IMG/VR virus record: IMGVR_UViG_3300028883_000032
Span: 62,001 to 126,000 of that record
Direction: 5' to 3' (one strand)
Length of the DNA stretch: 64,000 nt
Part shown: piece by piece, positions 14,451 to 48,562 of the stretch
Numbering within the stretch: position 1 is the first letter of the stretch
How the letters are laid out: the number at the start of each line of letters is the position of its first letter
Made by a program: the position numbers and the translations under genes
Notes under the pieces: generated by a model
Database searches by the model: none
What the model saw: only the letters and a program-made list of their open reading frames with translations
What the model was told of the DNA's origin: nothing

Positions 14451-15080
14451 TTAATAGTTTTGATATAAATTCGATTGGTGCGTTTTTGGTTTTAGGGTTT
14501 TTGATAGAGTACGAATACCTAAACTGCCTAAAGCCATACCACCGGCGGCAGCAGGTGCTAATCCCCACAAAGCGGCTTCGCTTAGAGCTTTTTTAGGAGA
14601 ATCTCCAGATGCTAAACTCATTCCTCCCCATGCAGCACCGCTTATAGCACTTGCTGAAGTTAGCGGACTTCGTAATAAACCAAGAGCCGATCTTTGACGT
14701 ACCATCTTGGTTTTCGGGTTTACTTTATATTTTAAACCTAAAGCTTCATTTTTAAACCAATTACCTACGCCTTTGTCTTGCATATATTTTAGGTGACCAG
14801 CAGTTTCTCCTGCCCATGCCCTTGGATTAAACATCCCTTTAAACCCAATACCCTCACTCACCGCACCTTTTAATTTTACACCGGTATCTTTATATCCCCA
14901 AATACCTATACTTGGTGAGCGGCGTTTAAGTTGGTTACTAACACCTAAAAAATTATGTCGTTCGTATCCAGATGCCAATCTATTTATAATAGACCCAGAT
15001 TGTTTGCCGCGTACTAAAAATCTCCCCAAACTTTGTACAAGGCCCGCCTCTTTTTCTATACTAAAATAAGGTTTTTGCAT
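14451..15080 (-). CDS. Basic Gly/Ala-rich putative virion protein
   Basis: EKEAG near N-terminus; C-terminal glycine-zipper hydrophobic helices. Confidence 0.55.
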   Translation of the reverse strand: MQKPYFSIEKEAGLVQSLGRFLVRGKQSGSIINRLASGYERHNFLGVSNQLKRRSPSIGIWGYKDTGVKLKGAVSEGIGFKGMFNPRAWAGETAGHLKYMQDKGVGNWFKNEALGLKYKVNPKTKMVRQRSALGLLRSPLTSASAISGAAWGGMSLASGDSPKKALSEAALWGLAPAAAGGMALGSLGIRTLSKTLKPKTHQSNLYQNY

Positions 15081-16141
15081 TAATCAAAACTCGCTTCATT
15101 AGTAGTAGTTAGATCAAAAATAACATCGGCCAACACGTAGTATCCGTATATACCTCCCGGCAGAGCAAATTCAGTTTCTATACCATCAACGTCTAAAGTT
15201 GCAATAGTTTCATCTAGAGTTGTTGCATTAGTATAAGTAACTGACCAAGTTACCGTACCATTGGGAACGTACCCTCTTGTTTTGAAGCTGGCACTTTGTC
15301 CGGGTTTTGGCTCTGTACCGTCATCTGGGCCTGTGGTACTTACTAAACCACTAACCATAAAATATTCTGGAACCGGGGCAGTAGTAAATTCTAATAGTCC
15401 TGATGAATTTACTTCGTAGTCCTCGGTCTCTACAAGCGTTACCGTAAATTCTTGTTCGGTTCCAGTATCCACCCAACCACCAACTGTGTTCTGCCCTTCA
15501 ATATAGGACCACACGTTGTTTATATCCTGATCTTCAGGAAGGTGGTTAGCTGTATAACTTACAACTATTTTATTTTGTTTTGGCATTTTTTCGAGGCCAA
15601 TTTGCATCGAAAAATCTACCTGAATGGGTACTGCGACAAAAACTTCGCGTTCTCTATTGTGCAGTCGTGTTTCTTCGCCTACATTGATATTATGTATTTG
15701 ATGAACACCTGCTCTCCTAAACTCCTCTTTGAAAGAAGTAAGAGCATTTGATACTATATTAGCTAGTTCTTCTGCTTCTAATCCGTTTTGGGATATACAT
15801 GTAAGAGTAACAGAAGTTCTAATTAAATCAGTATAAGTTTTGTTATTAGTCTCCATGTTAAATGAAGCAAGCTGATTAATACAGGTCTGCATTAGTTGCA
15901 TTGGGCCACGTGATAATATAATGGCCGGTCTTGGGTCCATGTGACCAGTATTATACGAAAACTTATCTAATATAATTAGCGGGGTATTTGTAAAGTCCGA
16001 TCTCCAATAAAATCTTGGCTCTATTGATTCATAAGTACTAAACCAAGATTGCATAAAAGATAGAAATATCTTCTTTGCCTTTAATGAATAATTGCCTATT
16101 ACGCCTGCAAAGTAAGCAGGATTTTTGTTTATGGTGCTCAT
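15080..16141 (-). CDS. Putative tail terminator/completion protein with C-terminal Ig-like extension
   Basis: RPAIILSRG..YTDLIRTSVTLTCIS.NGLEAEELANIV; position next to sheath. Confidence 0.55.
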   Translation of the reverse strand: MSTINKNPAYFAGVIGNYSLKAKKIFLSFMQSWFSTYESIEPRFYWRSDFTNTPLIILDKFSYNTGHMDPRPAIILSRGPMQLMQTCINQLASFNMETNNKTYTDLIRTSVTLTCISQNGLEAEELANIVSNALTSFKEEFRRAGVHQIHNINVGEETRLHNREREVFVAVPIQVDFSMQIGLEKMPKQNKIVVSYTANHLPEDQDINNVWSYIEGQNTVGGWVDTGTEQEFTVTLVETEDYEVNSSGLLEFTTAPVPEYFMVSGLVSTTGPDDGTEPKPGQSASFKTRGYVPNGTVTWSVTYTNATTLDETIATLDVDGIETEFALPGGIYGYYVLADVIFDLTTTNEASFD

Positions 16142-16329
16142 AAAGCTTTCTCAATGGGAACTGTTTCTCCATTCAAACTCTTTGGTACTAGATTTAAATA
16201 ATCGTCAACGAATGAAGTCACCTCCTCCACAGGAGCATTTGGGTATTCTTCGATAAGCTTATTCTTCGCACCTATCCTTAAATTAATTTCTGTGCCAAAA
16301 ATGTTGATATTAAATTCTTTTATACGCAT
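16138..16329 (-). CDS. hypothetical protein
   Basis: First ORF after - strand promoter at 16343-16371. Confidence 0.6.
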   Translation of the reverse strand: MRIKEFNINIFGTEINLRIGAKNKLIEEYPNAPVEEVTSFVDDYLNLVPKSLNGETVPIEKAL

Positions 16330-16342
16330 GGCAATCTATATC

Positions 16343-25286: not shown

Positions 25287-26248
25287 TATAGTGCCTTTCT
25301 ACGACCTTTTACAATAACAGTATTTGTTGCCCCGTCATTAACAATTACCGCTCTAACATATTTGAAAATTACATTTTCAAGATCAATAGCAAAAGTTATT
25401 GTACCATTTGTAACCGTAACCGAAGAGGCATCAGAGGCAGCATTGCAGTCATAAAATTGTATTGCCACCCAATCTCTATTGGTGGCCGTGGAGTCTTCGT
25501 CATTAGATGCTTCAATTGTCAATGTAACTGTCCCATCCGCATCAATAAATTTTCCTGTAAAAGAAAGATCTTTGTAGCCATCCATGTCATACCCACTGGT
25601 ACTTGGGTAGTAGTGTGTATCGGCCCCTAAGTTTGTTGTGTCTAATGTGTTTAATAATTGATACTGTTCATTTAATGGACTTATATCCTCAGAATAGATA
25701 GCATCATTTGTTGAATCGTATGCCTTTGTGGGACCATTGACACCTACTTCATATGAGTCACCAGATGCAAATGGAGATGCTCCTGTTATACTAACTGTGC
25801 CACCGGAATAGGATAGTGTAATACCGGCATATCCATTAAAATACACATTACTAGATGTCCCGGCAGTATCAACAACCCTTACATATACTAACTGTGAGTC
25901 GTCTGAAATTGCAATGGGCAGGCCAGTCAACGTAATGGTGGAACTTGTCCCAAACGCAGCTGTAAAATCACTGGGACTTTTGTATTCCGCTATTAACTGA
26001 CCTTTACGATTTGCGTCCGAAACAGCAAGGGCATTGTCTGAATAAGCAATTGTTGAACCATCAGCTACTTTCACCTGTGCATCTGAGGTGGGGTCTGTTA
26101 GTATTGCTGGAAGAGCATTTTCAGAATCTAAATTAATGGATACATCTTCTACAGTAACCGGCAATGGGTTTTCTGGAGATACGGTTACACGCACTTGTTC
26201 CTCTGCACCGGTCGGTTTAAAATGGATATATGTGCTACTACTTGACAT
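25286..26248 (-). CDS. Putative virion structural/decoration protein
   Basis: VSPENPLPV motif, Thr/Asp/Ser-rich beta sandwich. Confidence 0.5.
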   Translation of the reverse strand: MSSSSTYIHFKPTGAEEQVRVTVSPENPLPVTVEDVSINLDSENALPAILTDPTSDAQVKVADGSTIAYSDNALAVSDANRKGQLIAEYKSPSDFTAAFGTSSTITLTGLPIAISDDSQLVYVRVVDTAGTSSNVYFNGYAGITLSYSGGTVSITGASPFASGDSYEVGVNGPTKAYDSTNDAIYSEDISPLNEQYQLLNTLDTTNLGADTHYYPSTSGYDMDGYKDLSFTGKFIDADGTVTLTIEASNDEDSTATNRDWVAIQFYDCNAASDASSVTVTNGTITFAIDLENVIFKYVRAVIVNDGATNTVIVKGRRKAL

Positions 26249-26317
26249 ATTTCCCCCAATTTTTATGGATTATCATATCTTAATATACTTAAAAAACTCT
26301 TTAAAGTCAAGTAAAAA

Positions 26318-26342
26318 AGCCTCCCAAAATATTTAGGAGGCT
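26318..26342 (-). terminator. Terminator after major capsid gene
   Basis: AGCCTCCTAAATATTTTGGGAGGCT-TTTTT on - strand. Confidence 0.8.
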
Positions 26343-26365
26343 GACTTTACAAAAAGCAAAGCTAA

Positions 26366-27343
26366 TTAGTTAGTCCAGTATACCTTTGCCATTGAATAGG
26401 CGTTACCAATACCCATGCCGATAATCTCATAAAGACTCCAGCTGATAAGGTTACGTTTCTTTTCAATCCAGAACTTAACATCACCCAATATATAGGCGTG
26501 ACCCATATATTGTTTTGGTGTAAAGCCGTACATTGTGCCAGGAGGTACAAGTTCGCCTTTATTGGTAACAATAAGATCTTTACCAAAGATTGTGGTGTAG
26601 GTCCAGCCGTTTACTGTGGTGTTTTCTGCGATTGCGTTACCGCGATCATCAGCACGCCACAAAAGGATCTTGTTGTAATCTTCACGATTCATGAGGATTA
26701 CGGAGCAATCATAACGTCTAGCATCAAAATCATGCTCGTAAATTGTTGATCCAGCTGAATTCTTTAAACTCGTACTACCAACGGTACTTGAATTCTCAAG
26801 CAAGTTGAATAGACGTACAAACAACATCGGATCAAGCTCATTATTATTTGTATTGTAGGCTGTAGAATTTTCGTACTTACCTGACAATGCAACGGCATCT
26901 TCGACGCGACTAATGAATCCTTGGTCTTCAATTGCATGAAGATCTTTTAGAGAGTTATTTTCGATGATCTCTGTTAGAGGCATCTCATAAGCTAAAAGCT
27001 CTTCTTCTACTTTCTGGTATTCTCTTGAGCTGATTCCGTAAAATGCAATTTCATAACGTTCACCCATGATGTACTCAGAATCTGGTGCACCACGGAAGTT
27101 AATTTCCATCGCTACTGAATTGGGCTCGAGATCCACGACCTTAACCAGCTGGTCGTGATTTACAGAGCGTTGACATTCTGCCTTTGTAATAGGCTGAGGC
27201 ATCATAATTTTGCGTGAGAAAGAAACTTCACGCATGCGCTGACGAATGTATGAGCTTGTGCTCATCGCAAGCTTGGCGCGATCCTCTGGAGAATCCAACG
27301 ACTCAACAAACAGTTCATTAAGAATTTCAGGACTTGTTGCCAT
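26366..27343 (-). CDS. Major capsid protein (HK97-like fold inferred)
   Basis: Follows protease, scaffolds and decoration gene, ends at a strong terminator; C-terminal P-domain pattern GKDLIVT..GTMYGF..YEIIGMGIGN. Confidence 0.75.
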   Translation of the reverse strand: MATSPEILNELFVESLDSPEDRAKLAMSTSSYIRQRMREVSFSRKIMMPQPITKAECQRSVNHDQLVKVVDLEPNSVAMEINFRGAPDSEYIMGERYEIAFYGISSREYQKVEEELLAYEMPLTEIIENNSLKDLHAIEDQGFISRVEDAVALSGKYENSTAYNTNNNELDPMLFVRLFNLLENSSTVGSTSLKNSAGSTIYEHDFDARRYDCSVILMNREDYNKILLWRADDRGNAIAENTTVNGWTYTTIFGKDLIVTNKGELVPPGTMYGFTPKQYMGHAYILGDVKFWIEKKRNLISWSLYEIIGMGIGNAYSMAKVYWTN

Positions 27344-27354
27344 TTTTTATCTCC

Positions 27355-27807
27355 TTAGACCTTTTCGATGCCGATTACGGTGAATGTTGTCCCCAAGTAT
27401 GTAATACTGTGAGGTGACTTATAACAAACTGCCTTAACCTGACCCGGGGTTTCAGAACCTGAAGCCGCGGTAAGCAGTCCGTCATCTCCTGTTACTAAAC
27501 TTGTGCCAAGAGTGATTGATGCTCCTGTGTTGTATTTATCTGTAAGAGCTTTAAAGTAACCTTTAAGAATGGTGACTTTACCCGTCTCAGAGACATCAGG
27601 AGTGTAGCCAGCATCTGATCCTGTGCGGTCGCCCGCTTCAGACCAAACCGGCCATGTTAATACGTTGGCACCAGTTGTTAAAATTGCCTTCTCTTGAGCA
27701 TTTAGTGTTACCCAGCTTCCTTCATAGCCGGAGACAGACACGTCGCCAGTCTGCATCGTAACATCTTGGCGATTTGCAAGCTCGAGATTGCTTAACAACT
27801 TAAACAT
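27355..27807 (-). CDS. Putative capsid decoration/cement protein
   Basis: Immediately upstream of MCP; GKVTIL.G.FKALTD..LVTGDDGLL pattern. Confidence 0.55.
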   Translation of the reverse strand: MFKLLSNLELANRQDVTMQTGDVSVSGYEGSWVTLNAQEKAILTTGANVLTWPVWSEAGDRTGSDAGYTPDVSETGKVTILKGYFKALTDKYNTGASITLGTSLVTGDDGLLTAASGSETPGQVKAVCYKSPHSITYLGTTFTVIGIEKV

Positions 27808-27819
27808 GTGGTATCCTCC

Positions 27820-28272
27820 TTAAGAAAGACTATTTTCGATTATTGCCTCTAGGGCATGAGCTGGATCAACTGAATCCAACCCGTATAGTGATTTTTCCGA
27901 AAGTATGCCTAGAGAAAATTCTCCAACTTTCGATAATTCTAGTGCTTTATCTAGAACCCTTAATTCCTCTTCAGATTTCTTTGCAAACGTTGCAGCTTTT
28001 TTAAACATTGTTTCAGCAGTAATCAATCCAGCGTCTGCCATTTTCATGACTATGCGCTCTGCCAAATCTCTGTTTTGTGCAATCTTTACAATTTCTCTGT
28101 ATTCCTCTGAAATTGATTTTATAGCTTCGGCCACTTTATTAAGCCAACAATCCCCGTTTGATCTGGATTCAATTAATTCAGCTAGTTTGTCAATATCAGT
28201 TGCTTCAAGAGTTTCTTCGGAGGCCGTCTTTGGGTTCTCAAGCTCCTTCATCAGGGCTTGAAGGTTCATCAT
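27820..28272 (-). CDS. Putative scaffold protein, K-x-A rich
   Basis: Helical; KTA, KLA, KVA, KIA, KMA, KKA. Confidence 0.55.
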   Translation of the reverse strand: MMNLQALMKELENPKTASEETLEATDIDKLAELIESRSNGDCWLNKVAEAIKSISEEYREIVKIAQNRDLAERIVMKMADAGLITAETMFKKAATFAKKSEEELRVLDKALELSKVGEFSLGILSEKSLYGLDSVDPAHALEAIIENSLS

Positions 28273-28325
28273 TGCCTCCAGTTAAGTATAATAAGGGGCC
28301 CCGGCAGGGCCAAGGCCCCTAAAAG

Positions 28326-28652
28326 TTACTCAGCCTGTTCAGCAGCTTGTAGTAATTCTACAAAACGATCAAAATGGCCCTGGGCTACGATTTTACCGTA
28401 ATCATAGGCTTCTGCTATTTTTTCCTCATTTTCCTCGGCTTCAATTGCCTTGTTAATGAGTACTTCTGCTACCTTGACAACATCTTCTTCGGTATATTCT
28501 TCGATACCATCGTTACGAATCAATGCTTCCGCTTGTTTTGCAAACTCGGAAATGACTTCAAGACGTGCTTGGTCAAGTTCTGCTGTTTTTGTTTCTTCTT
28601 CTACTTCAGCAGGTTTAGCTTGCTTTGCCATAAATTGTTCAAATAGACCCAT
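28326..28652 (-). CDS. Putative scaffold protein, K-x-A rich
   Basis: Acidic helical; KQA, KPA, KTA, KQA, KVA, KIA. Confidence 0.55.
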   Translation of the reverse strand: MGLFEQFMAKQAKPAEVEEETKTAELDQARLEVISEFAKQAEALIRNDGIEEYTEEDVVKVAEVLINKAIEAEENEEKIAEAYDYGKIVAQGHFDRFVELLQAAEQAE

Positions 28653-29251
28653 TATTCATCATCTCCTTGAGTTTCGGCAGGGAAATACTTGTCATAAAGA
28701 TCTGCGACAATTTTCTGTGCTCCGGTTTTCATACCAGATTCTGCCTGTAATTTAGCTTCTGCCGGTACCGGTGTAGTTGGTTGGCGGCCCGTTGCACCAC
28801 CTATAATTCCAGCCGGACCCGCTACATAGCCATTAGGCCCCGCAGCACGTTCACCATTTGTGAGCTGTGCAATCAGGCCTGCGATTGTACTTGGAAGTTC
28901 TTCACGAGATAACTGTACAGGATCTCCAGTATGAGCCTGTGCATCTGGTTCTTTACCTACGACACCAACTGCTTCTTTTGCTAATTCAGCTTGCTTATCA
29001 AACACACCTTGCATGTATATTTGACCCATAGCATACTGAATCTCAGCCATCTTCATTAGATCGACTTCCTCAGTTGGGGATTCCGCAGGAGTATTTTTTA
29101 CTTCGGCTTCCTTTACCGGTTCCTCTTTTTCTGGTTCGAGTGCCGGTTTTGGGTCTTCCTTACCGGTCGATGCAGCGAGCTTTTCAGCTAACTTATCGAC
29201 TGATGTTGATTCGCCTTCTAAATCCTGCAAGAATTCGCGCAATTTGAGCAT
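28652..29251 (-). CDS. Putative scaffold protein, K-x-A rich
   Basis: Acidic, low complexity; KLA x2, KEA x2, KMA, KQA. Confidence 0.55.
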   Translation of the reverse strand: MLKLREFLQDLEGESTSVDKLAEKLAASTGKEDPKPALEPEKEEPVKEAEVKNTPAESPTEEVDLMKMAEIQYAMGQIYMQGVFDKQAELAKEAVGVVGKEPDAQAHTGDPVQLSREELPSTIAGLIAQLTNGERAAGPNGYVAGPAGIIGGATGRQPTTPVPAEAKLQAESGMKTGAQKIVADLYDKYFPAETQGDDE

Positions 29252-29348: not shown

Positions 29349-30152
29349 TTACTTACCAAGAATTCTTTCTAAAGCACTAACCATCTGTGCCCTACGAGAC
29401 AGTTCCTGCGGAGAAGTAGATACGTCCACTATACTAGCGGGTATGTTTTTTTCCATACTTCCTATTTTTTTAAGCATGTATGCCGTTTTATCAGCAGGAA
29501 TACGAACAAAACTAATGTCAAAGAATTTTGGTTTGGTATTAATTGCTCTGGCTCTTCTACCGTCAGGGAGTATTGAATTAATACTGCTTCGTTTAAGATG
29601 TTTACAGTAGTCTTTTGTAGTTTTGGCTTTATTGTTACAAATAGAACAAATATCGTAAGGTACTTTGCACCCCATACTAAATGGGGGATATTCGTTATTT
29701 AATATTTTAACTAAAAGATCTTCTGGTAGTTTTTTCCCATCTATATCCAATACCAACTCCACACGATGCATGTGTGGGTTATAGTATGAAAATATTGGTT
29801 TTCCATAATATGGGTCGTCTGGTTTATTTTTATGGTGCCTAAATACCTTGGCACTTGTTTCAAATGTTTTATGATACGCTTGTAAAGCTGATTCTGGAAA
29901 CCCATCCCCATTGCGATTAGAACCATAATATTCATCAGCGCCTAGGGCGTTAACAATAATATAAATATGGTCTTCGGCCTCTTTAAGTTGCGATAAAAAC
30001 TCCTCTAAAGGAGTCATAACCCCAGCAGTTTTCACAAACTGGCTCGGATGAAATCTTCTAATATTTACTCCGCCGTTCTCATCATGAAAAGGAATAGAGA
30101 AATATTTTTCCATGCCATCTGGAGTGTCTACTATATGTGTGAATTCGCCCAT
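29349..30152 (-). CDS. Prohead maturation protease (HK97/assemblin-like) with Zn-finger
   Basis: NRNGDGF, KVFRHH (His), FSMGC (Ser), CSIC..CKH; upstream of scaffolds and MCP. Confidence 0.75.
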   Translation of the reverse strand: MGEFTHIVDTPDGMEKYFSIPFHDENGGVNIRRFHPSQFVKTAGVMTPLEEFLSQLKEAEDHIYIIVNALGADEYYGSNRNGDGFPESALQAYHKTFETSAKVFRHHKNKPDDPYYGKPIFSYYNPHMHRVELVLDIDGKKLPEDLLVKILNNEYPPFSMGCKVPYDICSICNNKAKTTKDYCKHLKRSSINSILPDGRRARAINTKPKFFDISFVRIPADKTAYMLKKIGSMEKNIPASIVDVSTSPQELSRRAQMVSALERILGK

Positions 30153-30153
30153 T

Positions 30154-30780
30154 TTACATTTTAGGAAAGAAGGGTTCCATATTCGGTGCTTGCATGTCTA
30201 AAGTTGTAGGATCATAAAATCTAGCACCTGAAATAAGACTTGCTCCTGCAATCCCAGGACGTTTACGGGGTTTCGCACCCTCGATTTTATCTTGAGTGTT
30301 TGCTAGAGCTTCATAAGTTACAATCGGTGGTCCACCGGCGTCGTGTAGTTGTAGATTATGTTTCACAGTGCTTGCTGCCGATAAATCGTTTTTAGCCACA
30401 TCGGGAGAAAAATGCCGTACCATATTATAATACATCTTAACCAAGTCGCGATCATATTCTCCAAGCGACGGCTGAATGGCCACCATTCTATCTATTTTAC
30501 GGTCAAGCATTGCTTTATCGGCTGCAGATGCTAACGCACTTGATGTTGCATCAAACGCCTTGTCCATTCTATTAGCGGCTACCCCTGCCAATCCAAGGGC
30601 AATTGCCCCAGGAACAACGGTTCTACTCAACCCCTTTAGGGACGACTCAACAGTTGGAGAAGGTCTGCCTTTAACTTTTTTTAGAGTTTCTAACAGTTTT
30701 CCGATACCTTCAGCTGCCTGTCCAATATTTTGTCCAAAACTCATAGGACCCGCTAATTTTGTAATGTTATATTTCCTCAT
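30154..30780 (-). CDS. Putative head-associated protein
   Basis: TKLAG N-terminus, GAIALGLAGVAA helix. Confidence 0.5.
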   Translation of the reverse strand: MRKYNITKLAGPMSFGQNIGQAAEGIGKLLETLKKVKGRPSPTVESSLKGLSRTVVPGAIALGLAGVAANRMDKAFDATSSALASAADKAMLDRKIDRMVAIQPSLGEYDRDLVKMYYNMVRHFSPDVAKNDLSAASTVKHNLQLHDAGGPPIVTYEALANTQDKIEGAKPRKRPGIAGASLISGARFYDPTTLDMQAPNMEPFFPKM

Positions 30781-30782
30781 TT

Positions 30783-31775
30783 TTACCCCATAGGATTATA
30801 TTTTTTTGGTAATCCATTCAACGGACTCATTTTTGCAGCTTGGATGGCTTTTCCCTCTTCATACCCTCTTTCTCCAGCAGACTTAGATGCAAGAGCAACT
30901 ACACCCATTCCAGCAAGTGCAGAAAGTAATGCAGCTGTTGCCTTACTTTTAAACTCGGCAGTTTTTTCAGAAGGATATTTTTCATCAAGCTCTGAAAAAT
31001 CAGGGCCTTTAATGTAGGCCTCTCTATACTCATGGGCTGTTTTAACAGCGTCATCTAATGCTTGGACAAGTCCCGATTCTCCATTAATTGGGGGCAGTTT
31101 ATCCCAAGATGATCCAACAGGAATACGTAACTCGCTAGCTCTCTTAACCATTTCGGTTGCAATGCCATCAGCTATGCTTACCAGTGACTCATCTTCATAA
31201 GTGGATTCCGCAAACTTTACCAAAATTTGAGCAAGTACCGCCGGTTCAGGTTGTGCCGGATTTAAAGCTGCTGTTTTAAAAGCTTGAAACAGCGAATCTT
31301 GCTTATGCTGGAAGTCTCTATCAATTTCCGCCATTTTAACTTCAAAAGCATCTCCTATCCCCTTTGTTGCATAGATAATGTCACGCTTTTCTTTCTCTGA
31401 CATTTCAGGGAAATCAAATCCAACATCCTCTAAAACAGCTTTTTTGGGAAATAGCTCACTTGGTCTCATCATGTAGTCGTCTACACCAAGCAGGGTTTCG
31501 GACGCCTCTTTAGTATGGTTAACCATTCCCTCTACAATTTTCTTCGCATCGGCCACATCAAATTCGATATATTTGTCATCTGTTGATGCGTGTTTCTGAA
31601 GGAATACACGAGAATTGGCCTCTTCGACTACGCGACTAATTTGGTTATAATTGAGATTTTTTAATGAGGCGATTTTGGAGATAGTGCCATTCATTGGAAT
31701 ATCTCTCGCAAGGAAAGCATCTGCTGCCTCCATTCCCCAACTTTTGTAATCGAATTCTGAATACTTATTAAGCAT
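30783..31775 (-). CDS. Putative inner-head/core protein, K-x-A rich
   Basis: KIA, KHA, KEA, KMA, KTA x3, KFA, KRA; C-terminal hydrophobic helix. Confidence 0.5.
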   Translation of the reverse strand: MLNKYSEFDYKSWGMEAADAFLARDIPMNGTISKIASLKNLNYNQISRVVEEANSRVFLQKHASTDDKYIEFDVADAKKIVEGMVNHTKEASETLLGVDDYMMRPSELFPKKAVLEDVGFDFPEMSEKEKRDIIYATKGIGDAFEVKMAEIDRDFQHKQDSLFQAFKTAALNPAQPEPAVLAQILVKFAESTYEDESLVSIADGIATEMVKRASELRIPVGSSWDKLPPINGESGLVQALDDAVKTAHEYREAYIKGPDFSELDEKYPSEKTAEFKSKATAALLSALAGMGVVALASKSAGERGYEEGKAIQAAKMSPLNGLPKKYNPMG

Positions 31776-31789
31776 CCCAAACTCCTCTA

Positions 31790-33403
31790 TTATGAAATAT
31801 AACTTACTGGGGTTTCACACATTTCGCAAATAGCTGTAGCAAAAATAAGTGAATGTACTGTGTCATCTGGATCAGAATTAGTATATTGTAGTTTATTATG
31901 ATCTTCATCATAGTCTGCTACAATAGCCATTAAATCATCAGCAAATGGTGTTTTAAACTGATCGTAGTGTGGAAAAACATATTGTTTAGTTTTTACTCTA
32001 TGATAAAAATTAGAAATCGCCTTGTTACGATTTACCATCCAATGCATGGCCTTACCTTGCCACTTATAATCCTCTTTTAAAGTGGCAGAATGTAGATATT
32101 CTGTTACTGCGTAACGGCCAAGACGCCTGCGTAATTCTGCGTTGGAGGCTTCCCCCATGCCACGATCTGCCCCTATTCGTTCAACTTCCCACGCTTTGGC
32201 TATTTTTGGTATTTCGTCATGAATGTATTCAAAATTGGCGTATTTGCCTTCAAACCTACGTATATATTTAACAACAAACCTGTCGTATTCATCTCGTTGT
32301 ATGACACTAACCACGGTATAGCTGTTATCGCTGTTGGCGGGACCCCAGTCGATTCCCATGTAACTTGGTCTGGGTTTGTGTTTTAAAGTTATGGCTCCAG
32401 GTTGTCGGTAGTCTGGCATAATATACCCAGGATCACAAGCTGCCTTAATTTGTTCAGGGGTGATAAGAACAACACCATCATCGTACTCAAGACCAAGTAT
32501 TTCGTTATAAAAGGTTGCTCTTGACTCTGTTTCGTATTTATAAACAATGTCTTGCTCCCAATCAATCCATGGTGCCCCATAGAATTGCAGCTGAGATATC
32601 CTAAACCCTTCAACAAGATTTGCTCGAGATCGAGCAGACTGATTAGTGCTTATCCATGACCCAATTCGTGGATTAAGAATCTTCCCACAATACTTACATA
32701 TTAACGCGTGAAGTCCTATATTCTTTTCTGTTAGAATATTATGTTTTCCACAGTGTCCACACTCCACAGCCCACTCATTCATGGTGGAAGAAAACCACCA
32801 TTTCGCCAAGGTACCACGTTTTCTTTTAGGCGTGCCTGTATAATAATTCCATTTATACAAAGAACGGTGCATAGCTTGATTAATAATTTCTATGCTGTCT
32901 TGCAGAAGATCCTGAGCCTCATCGTAACAAATCATATCAGCAGAAAGGCCACGAAGTCTGTCAGGACTTTGTAACGCATAGCGCAAGTATATTTTTGCGC
33001 CATTTACAAGAGTTTTGTTAAATACGTTATTTTGTAAATTTCTATTCCACCAATACTTCTTTATAAGGGGAGACTCTTCAAGTATAGGCGTAAAGCGATC
33101 GTACGAAAATATTTTTGTTTGGTCGACTGACGGAGAAACATACACTGTACGAAATCCCATCGGTCTGGCATCTTTGCCGCCTCGTTCCCTTGGCAACAAG
33201 GCGCTATTAGCAAATATAATATTTGCTAGAGTTGTGCTTTTTACAACCTGTCGTGCTGTTTTTAATACTATGACATTCGCTGGGTCTATATTATATATAG
33301 GCCGCATATGTGGATAGGCATCCAAACTATACGGCATTCCATTCAAATAAACATACGATTCAACAAATTCACTTTTTGTAAAATTAAGCGGTGCGTTCTT
33401 CAT
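31790..33403 (-). CDS. Terminase large subunit (GpA-like ATPase plus RNase H-like nuclease)
   Basis: KTARQVVKST (Walker A variant), RGLSADMICYDEAQD (Walker B), YMGIDWG, IGADRGMG, PDDTVHSL. Confidence 0.9.
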   Translation of the reverse strand: MKNAPLNFTKSEFVESYVYLNGMPYSLDAYPHMRPIYNIDPANVIVLKTARQVVKSTTLANIIFANSALLPRERGGKDARPMGFRTVYVSPSVDQTKIFSYDRFTPILEESPLIKKYWWNRNLQNNVFNKTLVNGAKIYLRYALQSPDRLRGLSADMICYDEAQDLLQDSIEIINQAMHRSLYKWNYYTGTPKRKRGTLAKWWFSSTMNEWAVECGHCGKHNILTEKNIGLHALICKYCGKILNPRIGSWISTNQSARSRANLVEGFRISQLQFYGAPWIDWEQDIVYKYETESRATFYNEILGLEYDDGVVLITPEQIKAACDPGYIMPDYRQPGAITLKHKPRPSYMGIDWGPANSDNSYTVVSVIQRDEYDRFVVKYIRRFEGKYANFEYIHDEIPKIAKAWEVERIGADRGMGEASNAELRRRLGRYAVTEYLHSATLKEDYKWQGKAMHWMVNRNKAISNFYHRVKTKQYVFPHYDQFKTPFADDLMAIVADYDEDHNKLQYTNSDPDDTVHSLIFATAICEMCETPVSYIS

Positions 33404-34361
33404 CGCTCTTATCTTTTTTCTTAGCCTTAATAACAGCCTCTATTTCATCTAAGCCCATTCCAGAAACATCCTCCATAGTCCCACCACCCATTTCATTTGG
33501 GTCCGGGAGTTCAACTCCCAGCTCTTCCGCGCTTTTTATTGTTATCGAAGGATTAATGGTCTTAAGATTTATTTTTAGATCCGCATAAAGGTCTGTAGAA
33601 TCAGAATCGCTGTTTTCCATATCACGAATACGGTCATATGCTTTTAGCATAAGATCGCCCCACTTCTTCGATTGGTCAGGGTTGTATCTAGAATTTTCAT
33701 CAAAGTTGTAGAAAGACGTACGAAACAGTGATTCCAGCATAGACCCAAATGATCTGTCTGGAGTAAGGCCTAAATTATAGACAACAAAATCCTTGTCTTT
33801 TTTTAAGGCCATGGTATAAAGACGTTTCAAATCTTTGTTTTCTTCATGCTGTCTATAAATTTCTAACTCTTCATAACTCCAACTGAACACATTAAAAAAG
33901 TATTTAAAAAACAACATGAATATTTCGGTATCCCAAGCAGTGCCTTGTCGTCCATTTGCATAAAGCTCTATGTCGGCTTCATCAATACCAGCCATTGCCA
34001 TGGTTTGTAATTCTCTGCGAAGCCTTGGGTCATTCAGAGCTTTAAATACATCTCTATACACGTCTATCGGAAAATCATCTACCGTGAATAAGTTAGTATC
34101 AAATAGATATGCAAACATGTCCTTTACTTGTAATTCGTTAAGGATGTCAACATCTATTCTAAAATTATTTGGATCTTGGTTAAAATGCTCTGGATACAAA
34201 CGTGACAGTTGGCCACGTATTTGAGAGTAGGCATCACCTTGTATCAACGGTAAGGAGTATTCTTTTAGTCTGTCATTAACAGTCTTTTGTGACAGAAGAC
34301 GAAGAACAAGGACCTCACAAAACCGCCTATGCGGGATTAGGTAAATTGGGTTTACTGCCAT
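33384..34361 (-). CDS. hypothetical protein, possible terminase small subunit
   Basis: Overlaps TerL start; helical with acidic tail; positional inference only. Confidence 0.35.
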   Translation of the reverse strand: MAVNPIYLIPHRRFCEVLVLRLLSQKTVNDRLKEYSLPLIQGDAYSQIRGQLSRLYPEHFNQDPNNFRIDVDILNELQVKDMFAYLFDTNLFTVDDFPIDVYRDVFKALNDPRLRRELQTMAMAGIDEADIELYANGRQGTAWDTEIFMLFFKYFFNVFSWSYEELEIYRQHEENKDLKRLYTMALKKDKDFVVYNLGLTPDRSFGSMLESLFRTSFYNFDENSRYNPDQSKKWGDLMLKAYDRIRDMENSDSDSTDLYADLKINLKTINPSITIKSAEELGVELPDPNEMGGGTMEDVSGMGLDEIEAVIKAKKKDKSDEERTA

Positions 34362-35054: not shown

Positions 35055-35846
35055 TTATTTTCCGGCTGTCCAAGAATTGTCTTCGGGGGTGTAAATGGCT
35101 CGAACGGACTCAGACAGTGTTCTATTCCGCATACTGGACAAACTATTTTCATATTTCTCCAACAGTAGTGACACCTCTTTTCTACGCTGGTTATCGGCGT
35201 GTGTCAGTTGAACCACCTTTACATAAGGTTCAGTATCTAAAAGGTTTGACCAATATTTCAAACCGTTTGTTACAGCTAACTGTGTTGGTAAATCACTTTG
35301 AGAACAATCCCCGGTTAAAGCAATTTGAGTATCATGCCCAAGACGAGTTAAAACCATTTTTACTTGAGGTATTGTAGCATTTTGTGCCTCGTCTAGGATA
35401 ACGTACGCATTTGTAAGCGAACGTCCCCTCATATATGCTATCGGGGATACTTCTAATTTAAAGCTGTCTCGTAATTCTCTTATTTTATCGTGTGTTAGAA
35501 GTATTTTTAGAGAATCATAAATTGGTCTCAAATACGGATCTATTTTATCTTCTAACGAACCGGGAAGAAATCCAAGACTTTCTCCTGCCTCGACAATTGG
35601 CCGAGTAATAACTATTCTATCGACGGAACCGTCGTATAAAGATTTTATTGCCGCATATGTGGCTAAGAGCGTTTTGCCCGTTCCAGCGGGACCGGTGCCA
35701 AACACTATTGGGAAATCAGGATTTAAAAGATCGTTTAAGTACTTATTTTGATTTTTTGTTTTGGGTTTAATTTGTTTCAAACAACTGCTTGCTACTATTG
35801 AGGAATTAGTACGCTCTCTGCGACGGCTAGGTATTTTCTGAGCCAT
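35055..35846 (-). CDS. phoH: PhoH-family ATPase
   Basis: GTGPAGTGKT, TRPIVEAGESLGFLPG, AYMRGRSL, ILDEAQN, TGDCSQSDL. Confidence 0.95.
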   Translation of the reverse strand: MAQKIPSRRRERTNSSIVASSCLKQIKPKTKNQNKYLNDLLNPDFPIVFGTGPAGTGKTLLATYAAIKSLYDGSVDRIVITRPIVEAGESLGFLPGSLEDKIDPYLRPIYDSLKILLTHDKIRELRDSFKLEVSPIAYMRGRSLTNAYVILDEAQNATIPQVKMVLTRLGHDTQIALTGDCSQSDLPTQLAVTNGLKYWSNLLDTEPYVKVVQLTHADNQRRKEVSLLLEKYENSLSSMRNRTLSESVRAIYTPEDNSWTAGK

Positions 35847-46096: not shown

Positions 46097-46569
46097 TATC
46101 TATCCAATAGGTCCACAGTGTTATTAAATATAGATTCCAATGTATCACCAAACCCAAAACGCTCTTTATTTATTTTTATACTTTTTCGTAAGTTGCCATC
46201 GTTGTGACGCATTGTTGCGGCTTTCCAATCACAAAACATTTCAACGATGTCTATCAAATTCATGTCTTTTATACCATTTTCAAAATGCTCTGGGTGGTGT
46301 CTGTTGTTAGCATAATGATGGTCAAGAGCAGATTGCATATCTTTCAAATAACCTTTATACTCATCACTACCATATGTGCAATCTTTTAATTTCGGAGTAT
46401 ATTCATTAAACGTTGCTAATTCGGGATCTTGTAATTTACTCGAATCGTGCCAAGGCCCACGTTCACTTATTAAGTGAACAATTTCCCTCATAAATTTATT
46501 TACATTACGTATATGTTCCTGTGTTTCAGGCTTGCTATCGTAATCATTTACAGTATCTGCTGTGTTCAA
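46096..46569 (-). CDS. DUF5662-like HD-domain protein
   Basis: TQEHI..WHDSSKL..HHYANNRHHPEHF..EMFCDW. Confidence 0.85.
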   Translation of the reverse strand: MNTADTVNDYDSKPETQEHIRNVNKFMREIVHLISERGPWHDSSKLQDPELATFNEYTPKLKDCTYGSDEYKGYLKDMQSALDHHYANNRHHPEHFENGIKDMNLIDIVEMFCDWKAATMRHNDGNLRKSIKINKERFGFGDTLESIFNNTVDLLDR

Positions 46570-46729
46570 AGTATTCTACTGGTTCATTTTTATCGCGGCA
46601 GCTTAATATTTGAAATGTATTATTATAAAGCCTAAATACTTTATTTTTAACTATTTTAGTTATAGCGTCCGCAATTTTATCACATTCTTTGTCTGATACA
46701 TCGTATAAATCTAATGTCATTCTACACAC
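46544..46729 (-). CDS. hypothetical protein
   Basis: Short ORF linking neighbours. Confidence 0.45.
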   Translation of the reverse strand: MCRMTLDLYDVSDKECDKIADAITKIVKNKVFRLYNNTFQILSCRDKNEPVEYFEHSRYCK

Positions 46730-46735
46730 AGTTTA

Positions 46736-48562
46736 CTACGCTACAGTAGCGTTGGTTTTTCTTACATTTTTTGCACCATGCAACATTGCAATAACTTTGC
46801 TTAATGCACTTATTGCTTCACTAATAGGAGTTGGATCCATATCACGCATTCCCATGCGTACAGAGAGTAATAGGCGTGCCAACTCATTGGCGCATTCTTC
46901 AAATGATGGAAGAAGATCAATAAACTCTTTTATAGTATTTTTGTTCAGAAAATTTAAAGACAGTATTGCGTCTATTGAGTCTGGTGATGGCATCCACGCG
47001 GCTAATTTTACCCAGTAGTCTGTTCCAACCCAATTTTCGTCAAGAGCATCGGCTTCTACCAGTTTTTCAGCTAATTTTTCCAATTTGGGAGGCAAATACA
47101 GGTCATTTTCAACAATCATAACCCTACCATCACGTAAATTAGACATTTTTTCTATCATTTCACCGTCTGCACCACATTGTAGCATAGCCCAAACGGTCTC
47201 TTTCCAAGAATGGTTGCCTTCTCCTAAATTATACCTCTCTGCATATTTTTCAAGGACTGGACTATCCCAATGATACTGATTCTTGCCAAATGCACTAATT
47301 TTGTGTGCTCCAAGGCTTGCACTTTTATAAATTACTTGGTCTTGGTCTAATTTATTGCCCAATTTTACGAAAATTGCATTTCCAGGAACATAATACGCAT
47401 TTTTTTCCGTCTCATGGGGCTCAATGGCATCAAATTCCTTACGAATTACCTCAAATTCAGTATTAAATGGGATGTCATTGGCAGCAACCTTCATTGAATT
47501 GCCTGTTGTAACGACATTTCGCACTTCAAAGGGCTCAGATACACCTAAGTATGATCCACTCTTAGTTTGAATCACAAATAATCCTGTATCCCCCGATTTT
47601 GGCATCACTCCAAGCTCTGCAACTTTTTCATTGGGCTCTTTAGGAACAGAAACCCCAGAAATGTGCATATAATCGCCATTTTCTGTAATAAATAGACTGT
47701 CACCAGTATTTATTGGGAGTGCAATGCCCAACTTATCCATATTTGGATAAACTTCTGCGGTCTTTTCCCTTGGAGCAGTTTTATAAGATGGTAGTTTTAT
47801 TGCTTCTTCTTCTGGAATAGATATTGTTACCGGATCATCCCATTGTGAACAACCAAGAGTGAGTTCCCAATCAAAATTACCTACCTTTTCTACAAAATAG
47901 ATATCCCGCTCTATGTGCTCTGACAATTTTTCATGGGCATCTATATCTTCAACTGCGTGAGCCTTTGCAATTTTGCCAATGGCCTCGGTTGCATCTTCAT
48001 TAGATTCATAAGCCCAACGGGCATTATTGTCTTCCCGTAATACTTGAGCTATGCGCTTTTTATCACTAGTATGGATGCAATCAGCCTCCGCTAACCTATC
48101 AATGCGTTGGCCGGTTTTTACACCATATTCATCTGGTACACCAGCTGCATAGGCCAGGGATCTATCGATTTTTCCATAATTTGCAAAATCTTTGGGGCGA
48201 GGATCAAGTTGCATAAAAGCTGTTGTTCCGCCCATTGTCATATTTATAACTTCCTCATTGAACGGTACAGTTATGCCATCTTGGCGTATAGCAACATCAT
48301 ACGGAGCAATAACACCGCCCTTGATCAACACTGGAACAGAAAAAGGGCCAGCCGTTATTGATCCTACTGCATACCCTTTTTTCGGATCGCGCTCTTTAAA
48401 TCTGATGTTGATATCCTTGCCCATAAATTGGGGAAACTGGTCGTAAAAATATTCAATAGACTGTTTAGCCCACTCGGAAGGATTGTTACTTACCTTTTTT
48501 GATGCAACTTTAATACGAGACTCAAATAAATTATATTTAGCCCCATTAAATAGGTTATCCAT
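46736..48562 (-). CDS. Large putative head/core protein, K-x-A rich
   Basis: Own promoter (48602-48631), GAGG SD; about ten K-x-A sites in linker-like segments. Confidence 0.55.
   Translation of the reverse strand: MDNLFNGAKYNLFESRIKVASKKVSNNPSEWAKQSIEYFYDQFPQFMGKDINIRFKERDPKKGYAVGSITAGPFSVPVLIKGGVIAPYDVAIRQDGITVPFNEEVINMTMGGTTAFMQLDPRPKDFANYGKIDRSLAYAAGVPDEYGVKTGQRIDRLAEADCIHTSDKKRIAQVLREDNNARWAYESNEDATEAIGKIAKAHAVEDIDAHEKLSEHIERDIYFVEKVGNFDWELTLGCSQWDDPVTISIPEEEAIKLPSYKTAPREKTAEVYPNMDKLGIALPINTGDSLFITENGDYMHISGVSVPKEPNEKVAELGVMPKSGDTGLFVIQTKSGSYLGVSEPFEVRNVVTTGNSMKVAANDIPFNTEFEVIRKEFDAIEPHETEKNAYYVPGNAIFVKLGNKLDQDQVIYKSASLGAHKISAFGKNQYHWDSPVLEKYAERYNLGEGNHSWKETVWAMLQCGADGEMIEKMSNLRDGRVMIVENDLYLPPKLEKLAEKLVEADALDENWVGTDYWVKLAAWMPSPDSIDAILSLNFLNKNTIKEFIDLLPSFEECANELARLLLSVRMGMRDMDPTPISEAISALSKVIAMLHGAKNVRKTNATVA

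What the first reader, a model, noticed from the sequence alone, without database searches (positions are those of the whole stretch)
14451..48562. K-x-A motif marks a large putative substrate set for the prohead protease
Seen: K-x-A (often K-x-A-E, sometimes K-x-G/S) occurs six times each in the three scaffolds (108-199 aa), about nine times in 30783-31775 and about ten times in 46736-48562. It also appears once near the N-terminus of MCP (AKLA-M), around the protease domain itself (VKTA, KKIG) and at N-termini or module boundaries of about 12 small proteins (EKEAG, TKLAG, QKTA, KKEAG, TKTAE, LKEAG-FEKTA, FKEAR, TKFAS). Established: T4 gp21 (I/L-x-E) and phiKZ gp175 (S/A/G-x-E) process many head proteins; herpes assemblin cuts after Ala. 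Inference: 29349-30152 cleaves after K-x-A, a different specificity, and the motif predicts which genes encode head cargo.
Basis: inference. Interest (0 to 1): 0.7.

Follow-up and report, generated by a model that had tools for sequence, protein, structure and literature searches.

The report
Phage head protease's likely K-x-A cut sites
A short Lys-x-Ala motif is strongly over-represented in the head-assembly proteins of this 207-kb phage and dozens of uncultured relatives, at the places where a capsid-maturation protease normally cuts. It is therefore probably that protease's recognition site, a specificity not described for phage head proteases, but it does not identify single-site 'cargo' proteins.

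Summary
K-x-A occurs 7, 6 and 7 times in the three scaffold-like proteins, 11 times in 30783-31775 and 11 times in 46736-48562. Composition predicts 1.2-4.1 per protein.

It is specific. The reverse motif A-x-K and other K/A/E-rich proteins show no excess.

It is conserved. In 54 related metagenomic loci, K-x-A is the single most enriched of 1600 residue-pair types in 28 loci and in the top four in 43.

All 33 distinct major-capsid homologues carry K-x-A at residues 22-29, followed by a variable residue. In 37 of the 38 protease homologues that could be scored, a site lies just before the catalytic domain. All 33 scorable ones have K-x-[A/G/S] after it.

The protease 29349-30152 has the T4 gp21 / herpesvirus assemblin fold (Z 10.0). 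His107 and Ser159 (in FSMG) are invariant.

Best reading (about 0.7): the protease recognises [M/F/L/I]-[E/V]-K-[T/V/I]-A and cuts after Ala.

Not supported: using single K-x-A sites to call about 12 small proteins head cargo. After the core proteins are removed, N-terminal sites are no commoner in this region (7/37) than elsewhere (51/256). No cleavage has been shown experimentally.

The parts
29349..30152 (-). Prohead (capsid maturation) serine protease, 267 aa, with the assemblin / T4 gp21 fold. His107 and Ser159 (FSMG) are invariant. A CxxC...CxH insertion comprises C169, C172, C183 and H185.
   Evidence: PHROG 18299 'head maturation protease', E = 3e-8. AlphaFold2 model with pLDDT 83. VIA-align Z = 10.0 to T4 gp21 (5jbl), 9.6 to VZV protease and 9.2 to PRV protease. 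Invariant columns. hhalign pairs S159 with T4 S140.
30024..30032 (-). K41-T-A43, the predicted N-terminal self-cleavage site of the protease. It lies in a flexible linker between an N-terminal beta-hairpin piece and the catalytic domain.
   Evidence: Residues 42-44 have pLDDT < 50. K41 and A43 are at least 90% conserved. 37 of 38 homologues have K-x-A 8-60 aa upstream of the GSNxNGD motif. The flank-matrix score is 5.1, the second highest in the genome.
29460..29468 (-). K229-I-G231, the C-terminal boundary site of the protease domain. Most homologues have K-[VLI]-A-S here.
   Evidence: Consensus LxKVAS. 33 of 33 homologues have K-x-[AGS] within 32 aa after FDISFV. A disordered stretch, 234-246, lies three residues downstream of the site.
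28652..29251 (-). Scaffold-like protein 1 (199 aa). It has 7 K-x-A sites in its first 95 residues and its own promoter-like site and ribosome-binding site.
   Evidence: 7 against 2.1 expected, p = 0.001. Sites listed. Promoter-like site TTGACA-16-TATACT at 29330-29303, matching 11 of 12 positions.
28326..28652 (-). Scaffold-like protein 2 (108 aa) with 6 K-x-A sites spaced 9-21 residues apart.
   Evidence: 6 against 1.2 expected, p < 0.0005. The sites are conserved as islands in six homologues, e.g. 'edvvKLAe' and 'eeKIAe'.
27820..28272 (-). Scaffold-like protein 3 (150 aa) with 7 K-x-A sites in residues 15-94 and a conserved site-free C-terminal tail.
   Evidence: 7 against 1.7 expected, p < 0.0005. 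Homologues.
26366..27343 (-). Major capsid protein (325 aa, HK97-type, related to phage G gp27).
   Evidence: PHROG 2522, E = 1.5e-9. PDB 6wkk phage G gp27, E = 3e-6.
27266..27274 (-). K24-L-A26, the predicted propeptide cleavage site of the capsid protein. The predicted mature N-terminus is M27-S-T-S-S-Y-I-R.
   Evidence: 33 of 33 non-identical homologues have K-x-A at residues 22-29. The next residue varies (M, D, S, A, E, Q, N, G).
30783..31775 (-). 330-aa protein with 11 K-x-A sites, probably a core/scaffold or internal head protein cut into pieces of 20-35 aa.
   Evidence: 11 against 3.7 expected, p = 0.0005. The homologue at the same position upstream of the protease is the most consistently enriched ORF in the related loci. 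Aligned K-x-A islands.
30154..30780 (-). 208-aa protein with a single N-terminal K8-L-A10-G site (window coordinates 30751-30759), giving a predicted short propeptide.
   Evidence: An N-terminal K-x-A-G is present in nearly all of 21 non-redundant homologues, e.g. 'flKEAgw', 'KTAgf', 'KQAgw'.
46736..48562 (-). 608-aa conserved protein with 11 K-x-A sites, six of them in columns conserved across the family. It may be a multi-domain precursor. It is weakly similar to the Arash virion protein gp218.
   Evidence: 11 against 4.1 expected, p = 0.0015. Conserved K-x-A columns near residues 18, about 261, 413, 439, about 496 and 519 in 15 sequences that are 19-23% identical to the window protein. 9 of 11 sites fall in pLDDT < 50 segments of a poor model. 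BLASTP to Arash gp218 gives E = 0.007.
27355..27807 (-). 150-aa protein between the scaffolds and the capsid gene, with no K-x-A. It sits where phage G has its capsid-decoration gene.
   Evidence: 0 sites. Homologues have few or none. In phage G, gp26 'capsid decoration' precedes the capsid gene gp27. The function here is inferred from position only.
31790..33403 (-). Large terminase subunit. Context only; not a predicted substrate.
   Evidence: Pfam GpA_ATPase, E = 1.6e-10. PHROG 675, E = 2e-60.

Best explanation
The 267-aa product of 29349-30152 is an assemblin-fold serine protease. Ser159 in FSMG is the nucleophile and His107 the general base. It is built into the procapsid.

Its substrate recognition motif is K-x-A, with Lys at P3 and Ala at P1. 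The fuller preference is [M/F/L/I](P5)-[E/V](P4)-K-[T/V/Q/I](P2)-A | [S/E/A](P1'). It most likely cuts the bond after Ala.

Inferred steps:
1. It frees itself from its N-terminal piece at K41-T-A43, and from its C-terminal tail near K229-I-G231.
2. It removes a 26-residue propeptide from the capsid protein after K24-L-A26.
3. It removes a 10-residue propeptide from 30154-30780.
4. It chops the three scaffold-like proteins and 30783-31775 into peptides of roughly 10-35 residues that can leave the shell.
5. It cuts 46736-48562, and a 373-aa protein outside the window, at several conserved linker sites.

Shown here: the fold and the conserved Ser and His; the enrichment; and its conservation in position across a large clade.

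Inferred: that the motif is a cleavage site at all, which bond is cut, and the fate of each substrate.
For: 1. Enrichment and specificity. Six proteins hold 54 K-x-A against 15.8 expected. A-x-K, R-x-A and other K/A/E-rich proteins show no excess.

2. Conservation across the clade.
- Arash (53% G+C) and Vibrio phage D181 show the same enrichment in the syntenic genes.
- In 54 IMG/VR loci with distinct protease sequences, K-x-A ranks first of 1600 pair types in 28 and in the top four in 43.

3. The sites sit where prohead proteases cut.
- Capsid-protein N-terminus: 33 of 33 homologues.
- Upstream of the protease domain: 37 of 38.
- Downstream of the protease domain: 33 of 33.
- In the window protease the upstream site lies in a low-pLDDT linker, and the downstream one sits three residues before a low-pLDDT stretch.
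- N-terminus of the 30154-30780 family.
- Six conserved columns in the 46736-48562 family, whose members are 19-23% identical to the window protein.

4. A logo from 685 sites carries information only from P6 to P2'. P5 is hydrophobic, P2 is beta-branched, and Pro is excluded at P2 and P1'. This is the footprint of an extended peptide in a protease groove.

5. The residue after Ala varies (Glu in only 20 of the 54 sites in the genome's six enriched proteins; eight different residues in the capsid proteins). Ala is therefore a better P1 than Glu.

6. Mature capsid domains are somewhat depleted of the motif (27 against 46.6 expected).

7. The protease fold matches T4 gp21 and the herpesvirus proteases. 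In those enzymes P3 and P1 are the recognised positions: T4 I/L-x-E, SPN3US A-x-E, and phiKZ and 201phi2-1 S/A-x-E sites such as SQE, SVE, AVE and STE. Herpesvirus enzymes cut Ala|Ser (established knowledge, recalled rather than tested).

8. Phage G gp19, a 31%-identical homologue, has the same flanking sites: LVKTAA before its domain, and EKVAS and LKIAS after it.
Against: - No experimental cleavage data exist for this phage or any relative found. The Arash virion proteome paper gives no peptide-level data.
- The complex prediction of the protease with capsid residues 1-50 gave no answer. That is neither support nor refutation.
- Scaffold sites recur at helix-compatible spacings (14-21 residues). 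A repeated binding motif would look similar.
- Some conserved K-x-A, such as ADKTA inside the last strand of the protease domain, are clearly structural and probably not cut.
- The window protease's own C-terminal site has Gly, not Ala.
- Phage G's capsid protein lacks a clear K-x-A at the equivalent place.
- No subclade with a switched motif was found, so there is no co-variation between enzyme and motif.
Confidence: 0.7

Rival explanations
1. K-x-A is a docking or targeting motif, for example a short helical patch by which scaffold and internal proteins bind the inner capsid surface, the portal or each other. It is not a scissile site. Any proteolysis happens elsewhere or not at all.
For: - Sites in the scaffolds recur every 14-21 residues, often as phi-K-phi-A-E in probably helical, acidic proteins.
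- T4 internal proteins are known to use a capsid-targeting sequence.
- No cleavage is demonstrated.
Against: - A binding motif would not be expected on both flanks of the protease's own catalytic domain in disordered linkers.
- Nor at residue 8-10 of a small protein followed by Gly.
- Nor in low-confidence inter-domain segments of the 608-aa protein.
- The i/i+2 pattern, with a hydrophobic P5 and a beta-branched P2, fits an extended strand better than a helix face. The helix-type spacings K-x-x-A and K-x-x-x-A are only weakly raised (ratio about 1.4, against 3.4 for K-x-A).
Confidence: 0.14
2. The motif is the protease's recognition site, but the cut is at another bond, for example after Lys (K|x-A, as in the final HK97 cut after Lys, recalled from memory) or just before the motif.
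For: - Only K and A are fixed. Sequence statistics cannot say which bond is hydrolysed.
- Information extends to P5 upstream and only to P2' downstream of Ala. This would also fit a cut after Lys with recognition from P3 to P4'.
Against: - All characterised enzymes of this fold read P3 and P1 with a free P2.
- Small P1 residues (Ala, with Gly or Ser as variants) and a preferred Ser at P1' mirror the herpesvirus Ala|Ser sites.
- Tandem overlapping sites such as K-Q-A-K-P-A fit cuts after each Ala.
Confidence: 0.1
3. The excess of K-x-A is a by-product of composition or of helical, Lys/Ala/Glu-rich sequence and has no function.
For: The enriched proteins are rich in K, A and E. Genome-wide the excess is only 320 against about 270.
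Against: - Within-protein shuffles keep composition and still give p <= 0.0015 for each protein.
- The reverse motif and other K/A/E-rich proteins show no excess.
- The same motif is top-ranked in relatives of very different base composition, and it is conserved column by column.
Confidence: 0.02
4. The sites are cut, but by a different enzyme (a host protease or another phage protease), not by 29349-30152.
For: Enzyme and sites are linked only by gene neighbourhood and by analogy.
Against: - The motif travels with this protease family across hosts as different as Salmonella, Vibrio and, partly, the Bacillus-group host of phage G.
- It flanks the protease domain itself.
- No second head protease was seen in the window.
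Confidence: 0.04

Closest known systems
T4 gp21 prohead protease (MEROPS S77) and its substrates gp22, gp67, gp68, gp23, the internal proteins and Alt
   Same: - Same fold (Z = 10.0).
- The catalytic Ser aligns, and His lies within two alignment columns.
- The gene sits among scaffold and capsid genes.
- One three-residue motif with a free middle position marks many substrates. Scaffolds carry many copies, and the shell and internal proteins carry N-terminal propeptide sites.
   Different: - T4 cuts after Glu in I/L-x-E. Here the fixed residues are Lys and Ala, and the residue after Ala is variable.
- No Pfam S77 match.
- This protease carries a Cys/His-rich insertion and an N-terminal beta-hairpin piece.
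phiKZ gp175 / SPN3US gp245 (MEROPS S80) giant-phage prohead proteases
   Same: - They process many head proteins, including the capsid protein and abundant internal proteins.
- Propeptides hold multiple motif copies.
- The enzyme autoprocesses at its C-terminus.
- The phage is also large, and its relative Arash carries RNA polymerase subunits in virion preparations.
   Different: - Those enzymes need Glu at P1 and a small residue at P3 (A-x-E in SPN3US, S/A-x-E sites in phiKZ and 201phi2-1).
- Their catalytic triad is His-Ser-Asp. Here the third residue is unresolved.
- No detectable sequence similarity was found.
Herpesvirus assemblin (MEROPS S21)
   Same: - Same fold (Z = 9.6 for VZV, 9.2 for PRV).
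- Predicted P1 = Ala with Ser favoured at P1', like the herpesvirus Ala|Ser maturation and release sites (recalled knowledge).
- Sites flank the protease domain and free it from a scaffold-like extension. In Arash, D181 and many metagenomic relatives the protease is fused to such an extension.
   Different: - Herpes sites have V/L/I at P3 (recalled). Here P3 is invariably Lys.
- Herpes has two sites per precursor. Here there are dozens spread over at least six proteins.
- Only about 10% sequence identity.
Bacillus phage G gp19 and cluster C mycobacteriophage protease fusions (e.g. Cali gp93)
   Same: - True sequence homologues (31% and 27% identity).
- Phage G gp19 has K-x-A sites before and after its domain, and 8 sites against 2.4 expected.
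   Different: - The enrichment is weaker in their neighbouring proteins.
- The phage G capsid protein has no clear K-x-A at the equivalent place.
- Cali sites match the flank preferences poorly.
- I found no published specificity for them (the 2020 phage G capsid paper is not held).

Membership tests
Assemblin-fold prohead serine proteases (T4 gp21 / phiKZ gp175 / herpesvirus assemblin) | Seven-stranded beta-barrel 'assemblin' fold | tested here: met
   AlphaFold2 model with pLDDT 83. The top 33 VIA-align matches are all T4 gp21 or herpesvirus proteases, with Z up to 10.0, and unrelated MCE-domain folds follow at Z about 5.
Assemblin-fold prohead serine proteases (T4 gp21 / phiKZ gp175 / herpesvirus assemblin) | Conserved catalytic Ser and His in the family's order and spacing | tested here: met
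   H107 and S159 are invariant in 24 homologues. hhalign pairs S159 with T4 S140 and puts H106/H107 one to two residues from T4 H85. The hhalign score itself is weak (E = 0.072).
Assemblin-fold prohead serine proteases (T4 gp21 / phiKZ gp175 / herpesvirus assemblin) | Third catalytic residue (Asp in the T4/phiKZ type, His in herpesviruses) about 25 residues after the Ser | tested here: inconclusive
   H185 (S159+26) is conserved in at least 90% of homologues, and D167 is invariant. H185 could instead be a zinc ligand together with C169, C172 and C183. No coordinates were available to decide.
Assemblin-fold prohead serine proteases (T4 gp21 / phiKZ gp175 / herpesvirus assemblin) | Recognised by a curated sequence family (Pfam S77/S78/S21 and the like) | tested here: not met
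   No Pfam family at E <= 0.01. The only hits are PHROG 2774 (unknown function, 6e-13) and PHROG 18299 (head maturation protease, 3e-8).
Assemblin-fold prohead serine proteases (T4 gp21 / phiKZ gp175 / herpesvirus assemblin) | Gene placed in the head-assembly module next to scaffold and capsid genes | tested here: met
   Gene order is terminase, 330-aa protein, 208-aa protein, protease, three scaffold-like genes, 150-aa protein, capsid protein. The order is the same in Arash, D181 and the IMG/VR loci.
Assemblin-fold prohead serine proteases (T4 gp21 / phiKZ gp175 / herpesvirus assemblin) | Demonstrated proteolysis of head proteins | not testable with these tools
   This needs virion N-terminomics or a recombinant enzyme assay.
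T4/phiKZ-type specificity (cut after Glu, x-x-E) | Glu invariant at P1 of the shared motif | tested here: not met
   Glu follows Ala in only 20 of the 54 sites in the genome's six enriched proteins. The residue after the capsid-protein site is M, D, S, A, E, Q, N or G across 33 homologues.
Herpesvirus-type specificity (cut Ala|Ser) | Ala at P1 and Ser preferred at P1' | tested here: inconclusive
   Ala is fixed, and Ser is the most favoured following residue (+1.8 bits) in 685 sites. The scissile bond itself is not observed.

The most novel reading that the evidence does not exclude
A large, mostly uncultured clade of 180-500-kb myophages (this phage, Salmonella phage Arash, Vibrio phages D69/D148/D181, probably phage G) shares a prohead protease with herpesvirus-like Ala-P1 specificity plus an obligatory Lys at P3. 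It may also have a herpes-like Ser-His-His triad. K-x-A then maps a whole processed head proteome, including a 608-aa polyprotein-like precursor cut at six conserved sites. This would be the closest functional counterpart of herpesvirus assemblin yet seen in phages, and a specificity that host protease-sensing defences would have to match.
Probability: 0.35. Interest if true: 0.7.

Novelty: new variant of a known kind. Interest (0 to 1): 0.55.

Why it matters
Prohead proteases decide which proteins stay in a phage head and in what form. So far only Glu-specific motifs (T4, phiKZ, SPN3US) are used to read processed head proteomes from sequence.

A well-supported K-x-A rule would have several uses:
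- It would allow annotation of scaffold, core and propeptide regions in a clade where about 80% of genes are unannotated.
- It would give exact, cheap mass-spectrometry predictions.
- It would add a data point on how specificity evolved in the fold shared by phages and herpesviruses.
- Bacterial CBASS enzymes were recently reported to sense phage prohead proteases through loops that carry the protease's motif. A new specificity therefore also predicts what a matching host sensor loop should look like.

Tried and rejected
- Complex prediction of the protease (residues 44-236) with capsid-protein residues 1-50: score 0.27, below the mark of 0.32, so no verdict.
- Pfam on ten head proteins: only the terminase matched.
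- PHROGs on 30 further proteins: mostly nothing.
- Structure of the 608-aa protein: pLDDT 55, too poor for a fold search. It shows no significant similarity to the phage G portal or to any PDB sequence.
- Search for a subclade with a switched motif, which would show enzyme-motif co-variation: none found. There is only a possible K-x-S variant in locus L067.
- A programmed frameshift joining the protease and the first scaffold, as in the fused relatives: rejected. The 97-nt gap holds stop codons in all three frames, a promoter-like site and a ribosome-binding site.
- Homologues of 14451-15080, to test its N-terminal EKEAG: none among 5.8 billion proteins. Most other small proteins have no homologue in the fetched loci.
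- Literature: no paper on K-x-A, on this phage or on cleavage in Arash, phage G or cluster C phages. Two relevant papers are not held.
- DNA-level search of the phage collection: no match.

Full report
SETTING

The window is bases 62001-126000 of a single 206,856-bp phage contig, about 40% G+C. The finding's span lies on the minus strand. It is not a pure head module. In transcription order it holds:
- the 608-aa protein (46736-48562);
- many small unannotated ORFs;
- PhoH (35055-35846);
- the large terminase (31790-33403: Pfam GpA_ATPase, PHROG 675);
- a 330-aa protein, a 208-aa protein and the protease (29349-30152);
- three scaffold-like genes and a 150-aa protein;
- the major capsid protein (26366-27343, PHROG 2522);
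- then unannotated genes, a DNA ligase, a helicase and a tail sheath.

The only relatives among 50,697 deposited phages are Salmonella phage Arash and Vibrio phages D69, D148 and D181. More distant protease homologues occur in Bacillus phage G (gp19) and in cluster C mycobacteriophages. There is no DNA-level match.

Yes.
- K-x-A occurs 7, 6 and 7 times in the three scaffold-like proteins, 11 times in 30783-31775 and 11 times in 46736-48562. Composition predicts 1.2-4.1. Each has p <= 0.0015 in 2000 within-protein shuffles.
- A sixth protein of the same kind lies outside the window (genome 169143-170264; 12 against 3.0). It sits two genes from a 627-aa ORF that I take, from its N-terminal sequence only, to be the portal.
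- Among all residue pairs with gaps of 0-3, K-x-A is the clear outlier (z = 7.5 in the three scaffolds, 10.7 in the six proteins).
- The reverse motif A-x-K (17 against 15.8), R-x-A (5 against 5.8) and the 25 other proteins richest in Lys, Ala and Glu (27 against 36.6) show nothing.
- Genome-wide the excess is small (320 against about 270). A single K-x-A therefore carries little information.

IS IT CONSERVED?

Strongly.
- Arash (53% G+C) and D181 show the same enrichment in the syntenic genes. These are the protein two genes upstream of the protease (10 and 11 sites), the protease fusion itself (7 and 8), the next gene (8 and 10) and a distant ~285-aa protein (8 and 10).
- A scan of IMG/VR returned 70 loci encoding protease homologues that are 32-52% identical.
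- I counted all 1600 gapped residue pairs over the same-strand ORFs of each locus, without choosing proteins. K-x-A ranked first in 28 of 54 loci with distinct proteases and in the top four in 43.

Position-specific conservation is the strongest evidence:
- All 33 non-identical capsid homologues carry K-x-A at residues 22-29, just before the conserved N-arm. K and A are fixed, and the next residue is M, D, S, A, E, Q, N or G.
- Of the protease homologues in which the catalytic-domain landmarks could be located, 37 of 38 have K-x-A 8-60 residues before the catalytic core (typically [L/F/M]-[E/V]-K-T-A-[S/A]). All 33 scorable ones have K-x-[A/G/S] within 32 residues after the last core motif, with consensus L-x-K-V-A-S.
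- In the 208-aa family an N-terminal K-x-A-G is nearly universal.
- In the 608-aa family, whose members are 19-23% identical to the window protein, six K-x-A columns are conserved in 13-15 of 15 sequences.
- Mature capsid domains hold fewer sites than expected (27 against 46.6). These sequences are related, so the P value overstates the case.

WHAT IS THE ENZYME?

- The AlphaFold2 model (pLDDT 83) matches T4 gp21 (Z = 10.0), VZV protease (9.6) and PRV protease (9.2). The first 33 matches are all such proteases.
- hhalign against T4 gp21 is weak overall (E = 0.072). It nevertheless pairs S159 with the T4 catalytic Ser140, and puts the His pair one to two residues from T4 His85.
- The third catalytic residue is open. 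H185 lies 26 residues after the Ser, the spacing seen for the Asp of SPN3US gp245 and, from memory, for the second His of HCMV protease. It also belongs to a C169-x2-C172...C183-x-H185 cluster that looks like a zinc site.
- In the model, K41-T-A43 lies in a low-confidence linker between an N-terminal beta-hairpin piece and the catalytic domain. K229-I-G231 ends the last strand, three residues before a disordered stretch at 234-246.

WHAT DOES THE MOTIF DO?

A logo from 685 unique sites in 68 enriched metagenomic ORFs carries information only from P6 to P2':
- P5: M/F/L/I.
- P4: E/V.
- P3: K.
- P2: T/V/Q/I, with G, D and P disfavoured.
- P1: A.
- P1': S/E/A, with P, D, V and L disfavoured.

This compact, asymmetric footprint, with alternating recognised positions, is what an extended peptide in a protease groove gives. 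It parallels the P3/P1 logic of every characterised enzyme of this fold:
- T4 I/L-x-E;
- SPN3US A-x-E, with V at P4 and S at P1';
- phiKZ and 201phi2-1 S/A-x-E sites;
- herpesvirus V/L/I-x-A|S (recalled).

The residue after Ala is free, so a cut after Glu is excluded as the general rule. A cut after Ala is the most economical reading.

Gaps between consecutive sites have a median of 25 residues across the enriched metagenomic ORFs (quartiles 17-36). In this phage's scaffolds they are mostly 9-21. Cleavage at every site would therefore reduce these proteins to small peptides, as T4 does with gp22, gp67 and gp68.

I put about 0.7 on 'protease recognition motif'. Within that, I put most of the weight on the Ala|x bond.

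WHAT IS NOT SUPPORTED

- After removing the eight core proteins, K-x-A within the first 40 residues is found in 7 of 37 ORFs of the region, against 51 of 256 elsewhere.
- A flank-scoring matrix trained on the metagenomic sites does find more good sites in the genome than shuffles do (34 against 12.9 at score >= 2). They are almost all in the six enriched proteins and the protease.
- The best outsider is the N-terminal EKEAG of 14451-15080 (score 3.9). The same list also holds a site in the tail sheath, which a head protease should never meet.
- 14451-15080 has no homologue at all, and most other small ORFs have none in the fetched loci. Conservation cannot rescue them.
- They may be cargo, but the motif does not show it.

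RIVALS

- A repeated docking motif remains possible (about 0.14). It explains the scaffold repeats, but not the sites flanking the protease domain, the N-terminal K-x-A-G of the 208-aa family, or the inter-domain sites of the 608-aa family.
- A cut at another bond of the same motif: about 0.1.
- A different protease: about 0.04.
- A compositional artefact is excluded by the controls.

LIMITS

- No experiment bears on cleavage. The Arash proteome paper lists only protein-level tables, and its supplement holds annotation only.
- The model of the 608-aa protein is poor, so its 'polyprotein' reading rests on conserved sites alone.
- Related loci share ancestry, so counts across them are not independent events.

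VERDICT

It extends to a whole clade.

The core interpretation, a prohead protease with K-x-A specificity, is the best-supported explanation. It is a new specificity variant of a well-known kind of enzyme. The claim that the motif alone delineates head cargo is not supported.

Noticed in passing
window 29580-29650 (protease residues 169-185): The protease carries a conserved C169-x2-C172 ... C183-x-H185 cluster inside the assemblin fold. C169 is invariant and the others are at least 90% conserved. This suggests a zinc-binding insertion not known to me in T4 gp21 or the herpesvirus proteases. Alternatively H185 (Ser159+26) is the third catalytic residue.
   Followed up: partly
window 29252-29348; L002:15918-17393; L003:19896-21311: In Arash (491 aa), D181 (471 aa) and most metagenomic relatives (440-1330 aa) the protease is fused to a long C-terminal extension. 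Here it is a stand-alone 267-aa protein. It is followed by a 97-nt spacer holding the best sigma-70-like site of the region (TTGACA-16-TATACT, 29330-29303, minus strand) and an AGGAGG ribosome-binding site ahead of the first scaffold gene. There is no frameshift link.
   Followed up: yes
genome 166410-170264 (window-relative 104410-108264, outside the window; L076:6410-10264): There is a second K-x-A-rich protein (373 aa, 12 sites against 3.0 expected). It lies two genes downstream of a 627-aa ORF that is probably the portal. An amidase/endolysin and a spanin-like gene follow directly. So the head-protein genes are split between at least two genome regions.
   Followed up: partly
genome 60338-61462 (just upstream of the window): A 374-aa protein repeats SG(K/S)GCPKCAG(K/T)FMDR three times, 62 residues apart (zinc-ribbon-like repeats). 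This produces a spurious K-x-A enrichment (4 against 1.1) that has nothing to do with the head module.
   Followed up: no
L067:7319-8512: In one metagenomic relative the protein at the position of the 330-aa family is enriched for K-x-S (9 against 1.7) rather than K-x-A. This hints that Ser can replace Ala at the fixed position in some lineages.
   Followed up: no
window 28294-28320 and 26318-26342 (minus strand): There are two strong terminator-like hairpins. One has a 12-bp stem with 9 G-C pairs and lies between the second and third scaffold genes. The other has an 11-bp stem and lies right after the capsid gene. Terminator-like sites are about three times more frequent in 26000-32000 than in shuffles (14 against 4.7).
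   Followed up: no
L074:11803-12705 (phage G gp19): The phage G protease homologue has 8 K-x-A (2.4 expected). They include LVKTAA before its catalytic domain, and EKVAS and LKIAS after it, which match the flank preferences learned from the metagenomic clade. Phage G's capsid protein gp27 has R-V-A / A-L-A instead of K-x-A at the equivalent N-terminal place.
   Followed up: partly
window 33384-34361 (minus strand): A 325-aa ORF overlaps the terminase start by 20 nt. It is conserved in 10 non-redundant related loci directly upstream of the large terminase. By position only, it may be the small terminase subunit or another packaging factor.
   Followed up: no
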